From NCBI RefSeq assembly GCF_902459465.1, contig NC_047067.1:17856001-17920000 (forward strand): a stretch of DNA of 64,000 nucleotides, read 5' to 3'. A model generated the notes under the pieces. That model had not been told where the DNA came from, made no database searches, and worked only from the letters and a program-made list of their open reading frames with translations. Below, in pieces: positions 16,882 to 64,000 of this stretch. The position numbers were made by a program, and so were the translations under genes. Numbering within the stretch: the first letter of the stretch is position 1; the number at the start of each line of letters is the position of its first letter. The DNA comes from Asterias rubens (taxonomy: Eukaryota).

Positions 16882-17358
16882 TCAAAATCTGTCGTAGCCA
16901 TTGCATCTGTTTATGGTTGCAACCACAGTGCAGTTATCACAATTCACTTCACAGCACCAATGAAATCGGCACCGGCAGTTCACTTGAAAGATCACCGTCT
17001 CCTCCACGTAGCCTCTACCACAACACAAAATATCACATCCTCCAACATCCATGGAGGTGCTGTTGCACCGACGCCCCTCCGTGCCGAGTGAACCCGTCCT
17101 CGGGTTTGGCTCGCAGAAGTCTGGCGAGTCCATGGAATATACCAAGTCCAATTCAGAAGGGGGTTTCACTGTAGAGTCTTCCGGGATGAGGGTGCCGCCA
17201 TCGTTACCGCCGGTAACCTTTGCCGAGCCTTTATATTGCTCCATCAGGCGGGAACCAATCTCACGAAATGACGGCATTTTTTCCCAGCATGTTTCCAGCG
17301 TACACGAACCCGACAATCCATGACACTTACACTCTCGCCGCATAAATCGTTTAATGGC
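16882..17358 (-). CDS. WNT6: Wnt6 exon 4 (terminal)
   Basis: tttcag|GCC ATT AAA...; [25 protein letters not shown]...CRFHWCCEVNCDNC...RCNGYDRF*; palmitoleoylation-site Ser motif CKCHGLSGSC intact. Spliced CDS 80+230+281+477=1068 nt, 355 aa. Confidence 0.96.
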   Translation of the reverse strand, partial: AIKRFMRRECKCHGLSGSCTLETCWEKMPSFREIGSRLMEQYKGSAKVTGGNDGGTLIPEDSTVKPPSELDLVYSMDSPDFCEPNPRTGSLGTEGRRCNSTSMDVGGCDILCCGRGYVEETVIFQVNCRCRFHWCCEVNCDNCTVVATINRCNGYDRF

Positions 17359-19454
17359 CTGAAACAAAAGACACCACAGGAAATTAGATTGAAATCAAAC
17401 CACAACTGAATCAAAATTTCTGTTCAATATAAGAGATGACCCCTTACAAACAACAGTCAACACTAGTTTTCTTCTTAGCTCAACCCATGCAACTCAAATT
17501 GTTTACCTATTTATATATTTGTTTAAGTTTGTATCCCTCTCCCCATGTGTACATGTATATTGCGTGTCTGTAGGCGTACCTTTTTACATATTTTTATCGG
17601 TAGACTGAACCTTTAGGTTAGGGGGAAAATTTAAATTTCCCCCTCAGTCTTGCCATCTCCGAATTGTTGATTTTAATATCTTACCACGACTGTCATTCGA
17701 GTTGAGGATATAAGAAAAGAGGTGTGGAAACGTGATGAAGCGAGTAACGCGAGTAACTTTCTTTTTAACTCTAGTCGAGAGCGCTCTACTCAAATGACGT
17801 CATATGCAAAATAAGGTCTACGGTTTTTTCCAATGTATTCGGAAAACTTATGCAGTCTATTGATTACTGATCTTTGTTTATATTTGTTGTGTACAGCATT
17901 ACATTCAAAGTTTGAGGAACACTTTCTTTAAAACAACCTAAAAAGGCTCGAAATTCTTAAATTGCATTTTATCAGGGATTCAAACCAACGCCAAATAGAT
18001 TGGATACAAAAAGTACAATCTGTTATTATTGGCCGGCTTTTTGTTGGGCATTCAATCATGTTTATGTCCAGCCTATGGCATTTTAACATCACTCTTTAAA
18101 ACAGTTGAGTTGGGTAAACCACTTTCACTTGTCCAAAGCGAAGACAGCTTTATTGGGCCTTTGCGTGATAGCCTTCGATGACTCAAAAACAAGTAAACAC
18201 TTTCGCTATGGTGGTTAAAGGTATGCGTAGATTCCCTTCTTTATCTCTCTTCAAAATGGCATTTTTGGTTACAGAAGCCCTATCAATTTCAAACTAGGAA
18301 AAGTACTTTTCGAAAGTTCATTTTCTCCTAACAGTGTTCCAAGCTTTGCTTCTTGCGAAATGGCATCGCTTTACTACAGTGCGCAATAAGGTGGACCCCA
18401 GCTTTTTGCCAAATCACTTTACAACTTTGCAGTAAGACATTTCTATGATATGTTTAATTTACATGATGTATAATTTCTCTATAAAATCCTTTGAGGCAAA
18501 CCCATAGGGCCTACACTTTGTGTTTAAAGATATTATTTTGTGCGCTTTCCACCATCTCTTGTCTAGCTCCCCGTACGCACTAATGAGGATTTGTTGTTAA
18601 ATCCACAAGTTCAGACTATTATATAATTTGAATGGAGTTAGTAGAAACCAAGATGGCTACAACATAATAAAAGATTAATTCATATAAAATGCAAATTCAA
18701 ACTTCCTGTGTCCATCACTATCCAACCATTAGTTGATATGAGAAAATAGCAACAGCTAAAAAAAACTAGAACAAAAATTCACAAATTTTATTTTAACTCG
18801 CAGAACAATTTCAGCACACTAATCACTTTGCATGTCAGATAAGTTGTATATGTTGTTGAAGTATTCGTAACTATTCTTTATACCAAGCAAAACAACAAAA
18901 TACACCGCTCTTTAGTCGTAATTTTTTTATTTTATTTTTTTGTGATGGGGATTAGTTTTATTGTATTTATTGATAAGTGTTAACACTGAATTAATTTATG
19001 AACTATTGTCATCAATCGACTGATTGATTTAGCTGCTCCTTATCTTCGAAAATCCACCGATGTTTCGCCGGGAAGCCAACTTTCAAATGTTAGTCTTTGC
19101 AAATTGTTAACCTCCCCTTTAACGCCATGTCCCAAGGCTATATTGTTTTTGAAGTTTTCAGAAATTCTTGGATAATTATTTAGAATTGAAGACGAATTCC
19201 CCCCGGAGATTGAGGTCGAAGCGAAGTAGGCGCCAGACATATCTAACAAAAGCCAAAACAAATCATAAATATCTAAATGACCTGTCGCTGCTTCATTTTC
19301 AGCCGGTCGTAATTCTCTCCTCAATCAGGCAGATTTGGACCCCGTCCATTTTTTTTTCTTTTGTGGGAGTCACCACATTCGTGGCTCAAAGACCATCGCA
19401 TACAACGTGTTGTTAACGTCTTGTTCGAAGACTACCATACAACACATTCTTTAA

Positions 19455-51767: not shown

Positions 51768-52550
51768 ATGGCAAAGGGTTATTGCGCCCTCTGTTGATGA
51801 GGTGTGACAGTGTGGTTATAATCATTTGACTTGCAGTGGCGTTTTTTTTTGTATGAACTTTAGTGTTTTTTTGACGGCAAGTCTAATTCCTAATACAGCA
51901 CCGTCATAAGAATCGTCAATACAGCACAAAATGTTAACTAGAAATCAACAAATGGGGGCGCTGTTGCCAGACATCTAGACATGTACATAGATGTGTTTTT
52001 TTAATGGCAAGTCGTTTGATCCCAGTCTGAGGCAAAGACAGGCGATTACCATAGTTACAACCACGTTCAAACCTAAACGACAGATTGTTGATAACCTCTG
52101 AACAATAAAGTAAAATAGATATTGCCAATATTCGTATGGTTTGTATTGATACCAATGTTTTTAAACTTTCCATAAAATGTCGTGGATGGCCTTTTTATCG
52201 AAGCCACCAAAATGATATCACCTCTAAGATTAACCGGGCAAACATCTTTGTGGTGAACACACAATTCACTCGCACACATCAACACAATTCACTTAAATAT
52301 TGATAAAGGTATCATATAATATCATATTTACATATAGAAACATAAAGTTCATAGACCATGTGTCACGGTTAAAATAGTATGTATCAATTCGAAGCCATCA
52401 GACCCTTTTTAAAAAAATAGTTTCCTTTTTAAAAAGTATTTTGCCCAACGTCTCCTGATGTCCAGTTTTCTCTACCAATATTTTAACACGTGACACATGA
52501 TTTTAAACAAAATATTTGATTACCGAAATACTATTATAAATTATGACTTT

Positions 52551-53090
52551 CTACTGGCATCGGTAGACGGTCCTTATTGATGTACACTCCTGGCATTTGA
52601 CTTTGCAACACCAATGAAAAGTACAGCTACATCTCTCCTTAATCCGAACTTGCGAGCCGTCGTAGTCTCTCCCGCAGCACATCAGATCACACCCGTCCAC
52701 CCCTAACGATGTGTTGTTGCACTCCCGCCCCACCGTGCCGAGAGTTCCCGCCCTCTCGTTCCTCACACAGAAGTCCGGAGAGTCGTCGAAGTAGACCAGG
52801 TCTCGTGGGCCCGGCGGTTTGTGGTTGGAGTTGTACGGTTGGAAGTTGGCTTCGGTGCCGCCGTTATCTGAGCGGTCGCCTCGGTCCCTCCGATCGCCCC
52901 GATCTCCCCGGTTGCTATTGCCTCTGACTCCCTCGTTCCGTAGCGCGACTCTGGACGCACCGTCGAAGCGATCCTTGAGGAATTCGCCTACGGAGCGGAA
53001 TGTGGGAAGTCGCATCCAGCACGTTCTGATTGTGCAGCTGCCGGACATTCCGTGGCATTTACACTCCCGACGCATGTCTGACGAAACCGT
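52551..53090 (-). CDS. WNT1: Wnt1 exon 4 (terminal)
   Basis: gaatag|ACG GTT TCG TCA GAC ATG...; [48 protein letters not shown]...[12 protein letters not shown]...[27 protein letters not shown] found no exon 1-2 sequence in 56011-64000, so intron 2 is longer than 8 kb. Confidence 0.96.
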
Positions 53091-54864
53091 CTATTCAGGA
53101 AAAGAAGAAAAATATATATCAACCATCAATCGCAACTAAAATCAAATTTGAACATCAAAACTGTAGCTATATAGGAATCTGTTGATTGTATTGTTCCCAT
53201 TCTTTTAGCAGACTCTCCCTTACTTTAAACAACTTCATGAGCTTTCGTAGCACATACAAAAAACTATTTCATCGGTAGTTGTTGCTACGAAAGATCGCAT
53301 GGTGTGTACCTTCCTTGTTAAACTCAAGTATTACACTCATTTTGGGAACGGCGCTTTATCAAAATCCACGGAGGTGCATGCACACCAATCCCAACCCTTC
53401 AACAAGACCAGATCCGCATAATTATAGACAAAAAAACAGTCAACTCAAAGAGAGAGCAAGCTTAAGCAATTAGGTCCAATGTATTCTTCAAATAGGAGAC
53501 ACTTCCAATCAAAAATCAGTATTCCGCTTGCAAATTTGGTGAAGCATGGGTTACAGATTTATGAAAAGCGAGCAGCAGCCCACCAAAAAGAGAGGGTCGT
53601 GATTAGCACCTCAGATAGCAAATCCTGCCCTCAATCACGGCTCTTGCCCCCGCAGCTATTGCCCCACACACAGCCCTCGCCCCACGCAGCCCAGATTCCC
53701 TTGAAGTGACTCACAATAAGCTTGTCCTCAATAGCATTTTATGGGGGGTCCTTTGACATTCTGTAACGCCGACATAATAAATGACAGAATAGAGCCGCTT
53801 CCTTTTATAAAAAAAGGCCCCTCATCTTGTTGTATTAAACCGTTTTTATTCGCTTTGCTTCAGAACTTTTAATGACCCAACTAAATTGTTGGAGGCAAAA
53901 CTGCCAACATTGTCTCAGACAATGGTCCACTTTTGTTTCGGTTTAAGGTCCTACTAAGCACTCGTTTACGATCTGTACCGACGGGGCGATTGAAGACACG
54001 ATTGGGGTCTGTAATTTGGACGTGGATGCGAACAAGAGCGGCCGATGCACCGGACAATTACCCAACACAGCCCTTCAAAATGCTTCTTCTTTCTGTTACA
54101 ATTTGAAGAAACACAAACAAAAATGCTGCCCTTTTTATAATAAGAGGTTAGCGGGTCTCTTTTGATTAGGGGGGAAGTTTGGTTTAATCGGTGAACCGCC
54201 CCACAGCAAGCGGTTTACGACTTGGGTGTCGCCGAGTTGACGGAATGAAGTCGATGGCGCGTGGTGGTCCAAGCTGAGACAACTTGCTTCGCAATTACCT
54301 GTTTTTTGTATTTAACCGAAAACTCCAACCCGTATTCAGAGAGTTGGGTGTTTTCATAGAAGAAAAAAAAGGTGTTTTGCCCGGCATGGCAGAGTCATAA
54401 ACGTCATGAATAACATCATTTGTATCGAGTATTCATTTTAAGATTGGTTCCTTTTTGCTTTTTTTTATTCGTGGGAATTGTGCAGATACCGATGGGGCCA
54501 ATTAAACTGAATAAAGGAAACCGTTCCAGATATCAAAGGGGTGGACAGTCGTACGTTGTGATTCACCAGGTGTAACACAATAGGATTTTAGGAGCTCAAT
54601 CCATCTGATGTTATAGAGAGAGAGTTACAATAACGAACCAGTAATTGCAATAAGAAGATAACCTATACATAAAGGTTGTTTAAATATACCGCTTGACGGT
54701 GACAGCGATAATAAACGATTCCCTTCCCAAGAAAACGATGGTGGTTTTAGAAGAAGAAAAACCTGCATCATGACACAATCCGGTCCCGACAAAGACACGG
54801 AAAAGTACACACACAAAAAGAGACAACAAGACTGATGATGGCTCTTCCGGTGCAGCAAATGAAA

Positions 54865-55640
54865 ATAGTCTAATAGATGTTAAATTTGCATCGGGGATAA
54901 AGAATATGCATTTTGGTTTTTACCCATACACCGATGTGTGTTAGCACTGTATACTCAGTACTTTCCCGGGTTCTGTGAACAAAATATCACAGGCATATTA
55001 CTCGGGTGGGATTCGAACCCAAAACCTTTGCAATTCTAGAGCAGTGTCTTACCAACTAAACTAACGAGGTTGCCCGGTAGCTAGAGGCAGTTCGAATCCT
55101 ATGTTTTAGCAGCGGGCTGCAACAATTTAATAGATGTTAAATTTGCATTGGGGACAAAGAACAGAAGTGTGTGAATACTTTGGTTTTTCGCACCCATGCG
55201 CCTACATGTTTGAATTTTTTAACATAAATGTTACATTTCTTAATTTGTTAACTTATTAAGTTCTTTCAGGGTGCAAGAAATTGTCATCTGCTCTATCAAT
55301 GCAAATATCGTGGGTTCGAATCCCACCCGAATGATTTGCCTGTGAGTTTGTTTTACAGAACTCGTGAAAAAGTAAAAAAAAAAGCGTCTGAATAATTCGC
55401 CTTTTCACACCCATGCGCCTATGCGTGTTTGTATTTTTTAATACAAATGTTACGTTTCTTGATTGGTTGGCTAATGAAGTGCTTTCGGGTTGCAAAAACT
55501 TGTCATCTGAAGTAGCAATGCAAAGGATGGTTGTTGGTTCGATTCCCACCCGAGTAATTTGCCTGTGGATTTTTTTTGCACAGAACTCGTGAAAGTAGGC
55601 CTACTGAGTGTATTCACATCAGTTTCAGGGTAATAAAAAA
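54865..55640. repeat. Cluster of three tRNA-like repeat units in Wnt1 intron 3 (one on -, two tandem ~217-bp units on +)
   Basis: GGTTCGA(A/T)TCCCACCCGA..TGCCTGTG..ACAGAAC at ~55020 (-), ~55315 and ~55540 (+); CACCCATGCGCCTA at ~55190 and ~55407; a 3' fragment also at ~60505-60595. Confidence 0.75.
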
Positions 55641-55744
55641 AAACTATATTTTGAACTTGGCATTGTGGTGGATTTTGTTATGTATACTTTTGTAAAACAA
55701 AAGTCTAACAAAATCAATTTTTATGAAAAGAAAAGTTTACCCAC

Positions 55745-56010
55745 CAGTCTTCCAACTTCGTTATTGTGTATATTCATCATGAACCTCAAGTCCCGCCCTT
55801 TCTCGTCAGCGTCGACGAACTTCTGCGAGAATCTATGACCGAAGGCTATGTTGTCACTGCACCCGCCCCACTCCCAGTCTTCGTCACTGGGTCGCTGGTA
55901 CTTGTAATCGCAGGTGCACGTCTCAAGGCTCCCTTCACTGCACGATCTAGCTACAGAGTGGGCTACTGCAGCGCTGGTGATGGCGTATATAAAAGATGTT
56001 TCTCTGCATG
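55745..56010 (-). CDS. WNT1: Wnt1 exon 3
   Basis: catacag|CA TGC AGA GAA...GGA AGA CTG|gtgggt; [35 protein letters not shown]...[13 protein letters not shown]...[16 protein letters not shown]; [11 protein letters not shown] and DLRFMMN are Wnt1-diagnostic. Confidence 0.95.
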
Positions 56011-56872
56011 CTGTATGGAACGACAAATTCAAAAGAAACAACAACTTTAATGTGGGATGTTGTTTACTGACAAAAAACAACAACAATCATTGAGATGTTT
56101 TGCCCCCCTCCCTTCATACTGAGCCCCACCCCCTTTAAATTGCAATGAGATAGTCCTCATGCTTGCAGTCAGTACATTGTTGAAACATAGGACCACAGCC
56201 ATTATGCAGATACAGCAACAACTTAAAATGCAAAGGGTGTTTTATTTTCACCAAAAGCTGCCACGTTTAAGACGTTTATCTGTCCCTTAAGACACCAGAG
56301 TATCAAGGAAACATTGGTGTCAACGGCTGTGTAGTGAACGTATGCATCAGGTGAGTGTAACGAAATGAGTAACAGCTTATATGGAGTTTTCATTTCATAC
56401 ACAAAATAAATTAACACACATTCTCAAGATGCATCCCTGTGGAGACATTTTGTGTTCTTTCTATATTGTCCCTGTACTTAAGATTTTCTTATCACAACAT
56501 TCCTTGTGGAGCACCCCGGTCTTCCCTATAAAGTCCCTTTACTTTCCCTTTTCGTTATGTGCTTGTCTCCAGAAGGTACCGAATGTGAGAGCAACTTGAA
56601 ACAGAAAAGCCAAGTTGTCTTTCCACTTGTCTCATCTCATTTTCAAAGACCTGCTTTTTTCCCTTGTGCAACTTGATAACAAGCAAAATGTTTACAAACT
56701 TAACCGCTTAAAGGTTCAAATTAAAGGCAGCAAAATAAACATTCACATTGATAGTGAGCTTGTCACCACCGTATTTTATTGGTGAAACATACTCTTTCTG
56801 TGGGCAATGAGCGATAAAGACCACAAACACTGGCAACCATCATTTTGGGTTCTCTTTAACATGTAGCCAAAT

Positions 56873-63144: not shown

Positions 63145-64000
63145 TTAAGTATATTATTTCATTAAAAACTATGTTGTTTTACTTTAAATATGAAACTGAT
63201 ATAATCTATAGGTTTGTTTGTTTGTCTTCATTATTTTGCGGTTTTTGATATCATTGTTGTTACCACTTTTGATTAACTTTCGTGTAGGTCCAAGCCGACT
63301 CTCTTGTTTGTTTTCCGAAATATAAAAAAAAAAATTGTATTTGTTATACAATATAGTCTGCCTTTGAATTGAAATAAAGTGGCTCTAATTCAATTTGACC
63401 ATGCGCTCAAAAATCACAGGATGGCGTTTCCTTGTATTCACTCCGTACATCAATAATAACTAACTTCATAAATGAAACCCATAACAGAACACCGGGGAAG
63501 AATTTGCAAGGACAAAGGAGAACCGATTTCTGAAAATCAAAAAAGCCCTGCACGTCATTCAAATAAAATATCCACAAACTATCATTGAATTAGCATCCGG
63601 CTGTCGTTGTACCGGGTAGTGTAGCGGGCCAAACATCCTCCCCGAGCCCCGGAGCTGCGCGGCGGCCTTAAAACGCAAGCAAAGGCGGCCCCAAGCCGTG
63701 AGTTGATTTTCGGCCAGCCTGCCGCCCGCTGTAAGGCGGATCGAGTCACATCACCTCACGCCGAGTTGATAGTTTTTCTCATCAAACTCGCCACACCGCC
63801 AAAAATGTTACTGTAACATTCTCCTGTTGATCGGGGGGATGTTTACAAGGCCTACAATTGGTTTTTCCCTTGTGTTTAGGACCACCGCGAGAGTTACGTT
63901 TTCTGCCGAGTGTTAGACGAGCGGCAAGTCGAGGTGCATGAAGAATTCCATGAGGTTGATTTGATTACCATTGCAAGCCGTCTCGTGCGGCGCTTCGGGT

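What the first reader, a model, noticed from the sequence alone, without database searches (positions are those of the whole stretch)
52866..52910. Wnt1 linker carries a five-fold R-x-D repeat with three RGD motifs
The sequence reads ...[22 protein letters not shown]... in the variable linker between the N- and C-terminal Wnt domains, roughly 15 aa longer than vertebrate Wnt1 here. The 9-nt units differ at synonymous positions (CGG GGA GAT / CGG GGC GAT / CGG AGG GAC / CGA GGC GAC / CGC TCA GAT) while R and D are kept in all five, which points to amino-acid-level constraint rather than recent slippage. RGD in exposed loops is the canonical integrin ligand, and Wnt linkers are known co-receptor contact sites (Wnt7-RECK; LRP5/6 engagement; the large Wingless insert lies in the same region). 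The hypothesis is a Wnt that also engages RGD-binding integrins, or an alternating-charge loop that tunes solubility and spread. I do not know of a Wnt-integrin ligand of this kind being described.
Basis: partly seen in the sequence, partly recalled or inferred. Interest (0 to 1): 0.78.

Follow-up and report, generated by a model that had tools for sequence, protein, structure and literature searches.

The report
Starfish Wnt1 loop with repeated RGD
The five-fold R-x-D repeat with three RGD motifs is real and sits in a floppy, fast-evolving loop of a sea star's Wnt1 signalling protein, but another sea star genus has no RGD there, so it looks like an ordinary lineage-specific repeat, not a conserved integrin-binding site.

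Summary
It lies in the last exon of Wnt1 (53090-52551), and transcript contigs show that exon spliced to exon 3. The genome is an Asterias-type sea star. A. rubens Wnt1 has the same linker, and A. amurensis differs by one residue outside the repeat.

The integrin reading is not supported. The Patiria orthologue aligns codon for codon over units 2-4 (RGG-RRD-RGQ) but has no RGD. Sea urchins, sea cucumbers, crinoids and hemichordates lack the insert. Three unlabelled echinoderm sequences, probably brittle stars, have a related R/G-rich stretch without RGD.

Between Asterias and Patiria the linker has dN 0.38 (omega about 0.5), against dN 0.03 (omega about 0.02) for the rest of the exon. AlphaFold gives pLDDT below 50 across the repeat, and solved Wnt structures have nothing aligned there.

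Best reading: an old 9-nt codon repeat in the hypervariable Wnt1/Wingless linker. The spaced arginines are retained, and the aspartates, and hence the RGDs, appear to be an Asterias-lineage gain. The likely effect is partial neutralisation of the usual basic patch. A real integrin role remains possible but unlikely.

The parts
52866..52910 (-). Five 9-nt units encoding [15 protein letters not shown] (the finding itself)
   Evidence: Sequence and translation. Lag-9 periodicity is 24/36 and beats all shuffles. The nucleotides are identical in transcript or DNA contigs of two further labelled organisms, and there is one synonymous change in A. amurensis.
52848..52925 (-). Hypervariable linker segment (R56-A81 of the exon) between ...RNEGV and NFQPYN...
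   Evidence: 15/26 residues are identical, with 6 further gapped columns, against Patiria; the rest of the exon has 143/153 identical. dN is 0.376 against 0.032. AlphaFold2 pLDDT is below 50 over [25 protein letters not shown]. Solved Wnts have no aligned counterpart.
52551..53090 (-). Last coding exon of Wnt1 ([19 protein letters not shown] ... TVYRCQ, plus the stop codon at 52551-52553)
   Evidence: Pfam wnt E = 1.6e-59. The splice joint 53090/55745, with GT..AG on the minus strand, is seen in transcript contigs of runs X3 and X16. The linker is the same as in Asterias rubens Wnt-1-like XP_033629711.1, and the rest of the region compared (139 columns, from MSGSCT to the end) is identical.
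53091..55744 (-). Intron between Wnt1 exons 3 and 4 (2654 nt). It holds a very high-copy dispersed repeat at about 54789-55181.
   Evidence: The joint 'skips 2654, CT..AC' appears in X3 and X16. Depth is thousands-fold at 54789-55181 in all four runs.
55745..56014 (-). Wnt1 exon 3 ([16 protein letters not shown] ... WEWGGCSDN ... NNEVGRL)
   Evidence: ORF and WGGC motif. The transcript contigs cover 55745-56014 contiguously with exon 4.

Best explanation
This is a lineage-specific low-complexity insert in the intrinsically variable, disordered linker loop of sea star Wnt1. That loop joins the lipid-bearing N-terminal domain to the cysteine-knot C-terminal domain, and it is the same site that carries the large Wingless insert in flies.

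A 9-nt unit of the form CGN-GGN-GAY/GGN was amplified by replication slippage before the Asterias and Patiria lineages split. It left an R-x-x-R-R-D-R-G core that both genera keep. In the Asterias lineage, point changes then put Asp at the third position of every unit. That produced a regular R-x-D alternation and, as a by-product, three RGD tripeptides.

The loop is probably tolerated rather than specifically required. If it has an effect, the most likely one is electrostatic. The extra aspartates partly neutralise the basic patch that Wnt1 linkers usually carry. That patch is thought, from general knowledge of Wingless/Wnt and heparan sulfate, to help matrix and glypican binding, so neutralising it would slightly alter spread or solubility.

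Shown here: the position, periodicity and disorder prediction of the repeat, transcription and splicing of its exon, its phylogenetic distribution, and the rate contrast with the rest of the exon.
Inferred: slippage as the origin, the direction of change (a gain of Asp in the Asterias lineage), and any effect on charge.
For: - The repeat and its significant 9-nt periodicity are confirmed.
- Patiria miniata units 2-4 align codon for codon: CGG GGC GGA / CGG CGG GAC / CGC GGC CAG against CGG GGC GAT / CGG AGG GAC / CGA GGC GAC. The array therefore predates the split of the two genera, but Patiria has no RGD.
- Echinoids, holothurians, crinoids and three hemichordates lack the insert. An unlabelled echinoderm clade from ENA metagenomes, separate from the four labelled classes, has NRGGGDYSKKDRS-like sequence without RGD.
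- Linker dN is 0.376 (omega about 0.48) against 0.032 (omega about 0.02) for the rest of the exon. The amino-acid identity contrast gives Fisher p = 1e-5.
- 3 of the 4 nucleotide differences between the window and A. amurensis in this exon fall within or right beside the linker (52849, 52899, 52917).
- AlphaFold2 gives pLDDT below 50 and coil exactly over residues 262-286, [25 protein letters not shown].
- PDB Wnts leave query residues 55-80 unaligned.
- Linker length ranges from 23 to 138 residues among 321 Wnt1-like proteins. RGD occurs in the linker of only one other sequence (P0034).
- Charge: basic count is 11 in both genera; acidic count is 7-8 in Asterias against 5 in Patiria; the family median is 2 acidic residues and net +7.
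Against: - Within the five Asterias units, every change in the Arg and Asp codons is synonymous (CGG/CGA/CGC; GAT/GAC). This hints at some purifying selection on the R..D pattern in this lineage. The number of independent events is small, and GAC in units 3 and 4 could be shared by descent.
- Linker omega of about 0.5 is relaxed but not fully neutral, and dS is near saturation, so the figure is rough.
- Copy number is stable across all Asterias-type samples seen, so the array is not an actively unstable microsatellite.
- Only two asteroid genera could be compared. The direction of change rests on parsimony with outgroups whose linker alignment is uncertain.
Confidence: 0.78

Rival explanations
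1. Integrin ligand. The three exposed RGDs let Asterias Wnt1 bind RGD-recognising integrins. That would tether the ligand to cell surfaces or matrix, or recruit an integrin as a co-receptor.
For: - Three RGDs sit in a secreted protein, in a loop predicted to be flexible and not packed against the fold.
- Arg and Asp codons vary only synonymously among the units.
- The motif is identical in every Asterias-type sample examined.
- From general knowledge, exposed RGD loops often bind alphaV/alpha5-class integrins, and RGD followed by Arg or Lys is active in iRGD-type peptides.
Against: - There are no RGDs in Patiria despite orthologous codons, and none in any other echinoderm or hemichordate Wnt1 linker.
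- The linker is the fastest-evolving part of the exon.
- The three motifs are copies of one unit, so their number carries no extra weight.
- The Asterias samples differ by only about 1%, so identity among them says nothing about constraint.
- Two paper searches found no direct Wnt-RGD-integrin binding. The one RGD noted in a Wnt (human WNT6) is mentioned only as a sequence feature.
Confidence: 0.06
2. Selected charge-patterned spacer. The strictly alternating +/- loop is adaptive in the Asterias lineage. It could work as a polyampholyte that reduces heparan sulfate or glypican capture, or that tunes access of LRP5/6-type co-receptors to the linker. The RGD tripeptides would be incidental.
For: - Spaced arginines are conserved between Asterias and Patiria, and there is a basic-basic-acidic-basic core in the unlabelled echinoderm clade.
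- Asterias has extra acidic residues on the same basic count.
- Only synonymous variation occurs at the R and D codons within the array.
- Fewer than 2% of Wnt1 linkers have 8 or more acidic residues.
Against: - The rate contrast shows relaxed constraint overall.
- Echinoid Wnt1 works with a linker 18 residues shorter and a net charge of +1, so the loop's charge is clearly not tightly fixed in the phylum.
- There are no functional data.
Confidence: 0.13
3. Proteolytic switch. The overlapping R-x-x-R motifs (RGDR, RRDR) are proprotein-convertase-type sites, and cleavage there would separate the two Wnt domains.
For: Four overlapping minimal RxxR motifs lie in a disordered loop.
Against: - Asp at P2 and the lack of a basic P2 residue make these poor furin-type sites (general knowledge).
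- Many other Wnt1 linkers carry far better polybasic runs with no reported cleavage.
- The motif pattern is not conserved in Patiria beyond RRDR.
Confidence: 0.03

Closest known systems
Drosophila Wingless and other arthropod Wnt1 linker inserts
   Same: The insert is at the same site, after the RFDGASRV motif and before HKPP/DLVY. It is lineage-specific and of variable length. Across 321 sequences the range is 23-138 residues, and dipteran proteins reach 450-480 aa.
   Different: The sea star insert is short, about 12-17 extra residues. It is built from a 9-nt codon repeat and alternates Arg and Asp, whereas the other inserts are long and basic or Ser/Asn-rich.
Patiria miniata / P. pectinifera Wnt1 (XP_038047182.1, BAV17673.1)
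   Same: True orthologue. The exon is 93% identical outside the linker. The insert lies at the same place, with the RG-x-RRD-RG core aligned at nucleotide level.
   Different: It has no RGD and only one of the five Asp residues. It has 6 extra residues (SNSN, PG) and a net linker charge of +6 against +3/+4.
RGD-bearing extracellular signalling proteins with proven integrin binding (for example the TGF-beta latency peptide and IGFBP-1/-2; from general knowledge and reviews listed)
   Same: A secreted signalling protein with RGD in an exposed flexible segment.
   Different: In those proteins the RGD is conserved among orthologues and binding has been demonstrated. Here it is absent from the nearest other genus and has not been tested.
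Human WNT6, described as having an RGD motif (PMC7794017)
   Same: A Wnt ligand in which an RGD tripeptide has been noted from sequence.
   Different: It has a single motif in a different paralogue. That review reports no integrin function for it.
Wnt7a/b linker recognised by RECK (PDB 8tzo/8tzp Wnt7a found; the RECK dependence is from general knowledge)
   Same: It shows that the NTD-CTD linker can be a specific co-receptor contact.
   Different: The Wnt7 linker is conserved among vertebrate orthologues and partly ordered. The sea star segment is unconserved and predicted to be disordered.

Membership tests
Wnt1 orthologue (Wnt family, PF00110) | Wnt domain recognised by profile | tested here: met
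   PF00110 E = 1.6e-59, profile positions 157-305 of 305.
Wnt1 orthologue (Wnt family, PF00110) | Conserved cysteine framework and the [10 protein letters not shown] lipidation-site motif | tested here: met
   All invariant Cys columns of 19 Wnt1-like sequences are present, and [10 protein letters not shown] is present.
Wnt1 orthologue (Wnt family, PF00110) | Closest relatives are Wnt1 rather than other Wnt subfamilies | tested here: met
   Best named hits are all Wnt-1/wingless. The window groups with Asterias and Patiria Wnt1 at 97/98 support.
Wnt1 orthologue (Wnt family, PF00110) | Expressed and spliced as predicted | tested here: met
   Transcript contigs of about 3.2 kb in X3 and X16 join 55745 to 53090. 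Raw reads of the RNA run X24 barely cover the exon.
RGD-type integrin ligand | RGD tripeptide in an extracellular protein | tested here: met
   There are three RGDs. Wnt proteins are secreted (family knowledge).
RGD-type integrin ligand | RGD presented on an exposed, flexible loop | tested here: inconclusive
   AlphaFold2 gives pLDDT below 50 and coil over the repeat. This is compatible with exposure, but it is a prediction of disorder, not of a presenting loop.
RGD-type integrin ligand | RGD conserved among orthologues | tested here: not met
   RGD is absent in Patiria (2 species), 4 echinoids, 2 holothurians, 3 crinoids, 3 hemichordates and 3 unlabelled echinoderm sequences. Only 1 other of 321 Wnt1 linkers has it.
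RGD-type integrin ligand | Demonstrated RGD-dependent integrin binding | not testable with these tools
   This needs binding or adhesion assays, or at least complex prediction, which was not available here.
Codon-repeat (slippage-derived) low-complexity insert | Tandem periodicity at DNA level | tested here: met
   Lag-9 matches are 24/36 with shuffle p below 5e-5. TRF finds 2.3 copies at 91%.
Codon-repeat (slippage-derived) low-complexity insert | Located in a region with indels and elevated substitution among orthologues | tested here: met
Codon-repeat (slippage-derived) low-complexity insert | Copy-number variation among close relatives (ongoing instability) | tested here: not met
   The same five units are found in the window, in A. 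amurensis, and in contigs of organisms B and C. The array is old and now stable.

The most novel reading that the evidence does not exclude
In the Asterias lineage, Wnt1 has acquired a working triple-RGD loop that binds an RGD-recognising integrin. A Wnt ligand would then be tethered to, or would signal through, an integrin directly. This would be a recent, lineage-restricted gain of a second receptor contact on a morphogen.
Probability: 0.05. Interest if true: 0.7.

Novelty: new member of a known kind. Interest (0 to 1): 0.2.

Why it matters
If the RGDs were functional, this would be a direct physical link between a Wnt morphogen and integrins. It would also be an example of a new receptor contact arising from a codon repeat. 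The evidence points the other way.

The finding is mainly a clean illustration that the Wnt1/Wingless linker is a hotspot for lineage-specific, low-complexity inserts. It also shows that RGD tripeptides arise there as by-products of Arg/Gly/Asp-rich repeats.

The residual value is modest. The Asterias and Patiria linkers form a natural pair of variants, alternating charge against mostly basic, that could be swapped to test whether linker charge affects the range of Wnt1 in echinoderm embryos.

Tried and rejected
- The protein search with the exon alone returned nothing closer than 68%. Full-length sea star Wnt1 proteins fall outside the length window. A profile led by a full-length Wnt1 and cluster listing solved this.
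- A third protein search with A. amurensis Wnt1 found no further asteroid cluster. Only Asterias and Patiria could be compared, and no Acanthaster, Pisaster or other sea star Wnt1 was in the collection.
- Contig look-ups for the unlabelled ENA relatives gave no taxon. Their placement as a separate echinoderm clade, probably ophiuroids, rests on elimination in a tree built from 139 columns.
- Raw reads of RNA run X24 gave almost no coverage of the exon, so no expression level is claimed.
- Paper searches for a Wnt-RGD-integrin interaction found only reviews of other RGD proteins and the WNT6 remark.
- In PMC6588345, 'linker' refers to Frizzled, not to Wnt, so it is not cited for the Wnt7-RECK contact.
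- The Atlas search did not resolve the subfamily of the neighbouring Wnt gene.
- Furin-type cleavage was considered and ranked low on motif quality.
- Co-folding with an integrin could not be run with these tools.

Full report
**What is there**

The minus strand of window 52866-52910 reads CGG GGA GAT, CGG GGC GAT, CGG AGG GAC, CGA GGC GAC, CGC TCA GAT.

The surrounding open frame matches the C-terminal half of the Pfam wnt domain (E = 1.6e-59). It keeps the [10 protein letters not shown] motif and every invariant cysteine of Wnt1-like proteins.

A splice acceptor precedes [14 protein letters not shown] at 53090. Exon 3 ([16 protein letters not shown]...WEWGGCSDN...NNEVGRL) lies at 56014-55745.

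Transcript contigs of about 3.2 kb in two public runs, X3 and X16, join 55745 directly to 53090, skipping 2654 nt with GT..AG on the coding strand. So the exon, repeat included, is transcribed and spliced as modelled.

Exons 1-2 are not in the window. In Asterias amurensis the gene spans about 24 kb, which would put them beyond the window's end at 64000.

**Is it more than chance?**

The 45 nt have 24 of 36 matches at lag 9. The mean for 45-nt windows of the same exon is 11.4. No nucleotide shuffle out of 20,000 reached this value, and only 0.02% of codon shuffles did.

Tandem Repeats Finder picks up only the first 2.3 copies, at 91% identity. Units share 4 to 8 of 9 bases. This is therefore a real but old and diverged tandem codon repeat. 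The three RGDs are copies of one amplified unit, not three independent occurrences.

**Whose gene is it?**

Earlier notes of this scan describe the genome as a sea star. I checked this. The window's linker is the same as in Asterias rubens Wnt-1-like XP_033629711.1, and the region from MSGSCT to the end, linker aside, is identical to it. Exon 4 differs from A. amurensis XP_071792224.1 by one residue (TEA against TED) and 4 of 540 nucleotides.

Public runs of three coded organisms hold 74-100% of the stretch's 31-mers. In contigs of organisms B and C the 45 nt are unchanged and no indel falls in the coding exon. These samples differ by only about 1%, so their agreement says nothing about constraint.

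**The decisive comparison**

Full-length sea star Wnt1 proteins were reached with a profile search and cluster listing. In Patiria miniata and P. pectinifera the linker reads SNSN(S/N)NRPGSERGGRRDRGQQRAPTGTES.

A codon alignment of the genomic exons shows that units 2-4 are orthologous. CGG GGC GGA / CGG CGG GAC / CGC GGC CAG in Patiria lie opposite CGG GGC GAT / CGG AGG GAC / CGA GGC GAC in Asterias.

However, Patiria has RGG, RRD and RGQ. It has none of the three RGDs and one of the five aspartates. Only the spaced arginines and the RRD-RG core persist.

The wider distribution, all unless stated:
- Four sea urchins, two sea cucumbers, three crinoids and three hemichordates lack the insert altogether.
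- Three unlabelled ENA metagenome sequences have NRGGGDYSKKDRS, NRAGGGYRRSRDFK and NRNDAGYRKNRDSR at this place, again without RGD.
- These three form a clade separate from asteroids, echinoids, holothurians and crinoids. By elimination they are most likely brittle stars.

Parsimony therefore makes the aspartates, and with them the RGDs, an Asterias-lineage gain.

**Rates**

Between Asterias and Patiria, the 26 alignable linker codons have 15 identities, plus 6 gapped columns. Their dN is 0.376 and omega is about 0.48.

The other 153 codons of the exon have 143 identities, dN 0.032 and omega about 0.02. The identity contrast gives Fisher p = 1e-5. dS is near saturation, so the omega values are rough, but the 12-fold dN contrast is robust.

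Three of the four window-against-A. amurensis differences also fall within or right beside the linker.

One point favours some constraint within Asterias. All variation at the Arg and Asp codons among the five units is synonymous. The number of independent events is small.

**Structure**

Solved Wnt5a, Wnt3a, Wnt3 and Wnt7a chains align to query residues 1-54 and 81/86-179. Residues 55-80, which hold the repeat, have no counterpart.

An AlphaFold2 model of A. amurensis Wnt1, built from a 49-sequence alignment, has mean pLDDT 76.7 and pTM 0.75. It gives pLDDT below 50 and coil for residues 262-286, which are [25 protein letters not shown].

The loop is thus predicted to be disordered. That is compatible with exposure, but equally with a neutral spacer.

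**Family background**

Among 321 Wnt1-like proteins gathered here, the DGAS-to-DLVY linker ranges from 23 to 138 residues with a median of 38. The sea star's is 50. Only one other sequence has RGD in the linker: P0034, with NRGDRRKRSRR.

RGD turns up sporadically elsewhere. For example, the four non-Diadema sea urchins in the set have CDYK(Y/F)RGDSGNDWEW in the N-terminal domain. Human WNT6 has been described as carrying an RGD motif (PMC7794017).

Two literature searches found no report of direct Wnt-RGD-integrin binding.

Wnt1 linkers are usually basic, with median net charge +7 and a median of 2 acidic residues. Asterias and Patiria both have 11 basic residues, but Asterias has 7-8 acidic residues against 5, giving net +3/+4 against +6.

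**Interpretation**

The best-supported reading (about 0.78) is an old slippage-derived codon repeat in the hypervariable, disordered Wnt1/Wingless linker. Its arginine spacing is retained. Its aspartates, and hence its RGDs, are a derived and probably incidental feature of the Asterias lineage.

If the loop matters at all, partial neutralisation of the basic patch is the most likely effect. I give a selected charge-patterned spacer about 0.13.

A genuine integrin ligand is not excluded, because an exposed RGD in a secreted protein can bind. It has no comparative support, and I put it at about 0.05-0.06. A convertase cleavage site is less likely still.

**Limits**

- Only two asteroid genera were available.
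- The outgroup linker alignment is uncertain.
- Contigs cannot reveal rare length variants.
- No binding or complex prediction could be run.

Noticed in passing
window 16882-17367, about 22547 and about 31735 (minus strand): A second Wnt gene lies downstream of Wnt1 on the same strand. Its exons carry RWNC (about 31735), WEWGGC (about 22547) and CKCHGLSGSC...CRFHWCC (17367-16882). By the conserved Wnt1-Wnt6-Wnt10 cluster it is probably Wnt6, but the subfamily was not resolved.
   Followed up: partly
window 54789-55181 (Wnt1 intron): A very high-copy dispersed repeat. Summed depth is thousands-fold above the flanks in DNA and RNA runs of all organisms, with many loose ends and internal joints. 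It is likely a SINE/MITE-like element.
   Followed up: no
P0270, P0390, P0391/P0392, P0393 (sea urchin Wnt1), residues about 158-161 (66-69 in the shorter P0391/P0392): Lytechinus (two species), Strongylocentrotus and Paracentrotus Wnt1 carry RGDS in the N-terminal-domain loop just before WEWGGC (CDYK[YF]RGDSGNDWEW). Diadema and the sea stars ([11 protein letters not shown]) do not have it. This RGD is conserved across several urchin genera, unlike the sea star one.
   Followed up: no
window 52300-52550 (Wnt1 3' UTR): The transcript contig of organism C differs from the window here by several indels (minus 15, minus 6, plus 1, plus 1) and substitutions around 52400-52438. The coding exon has only two substitutions.
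   Followed up: no
window, whole: The window contains 508 N. Their position was not examined and they were not filled.
   Followed up: no
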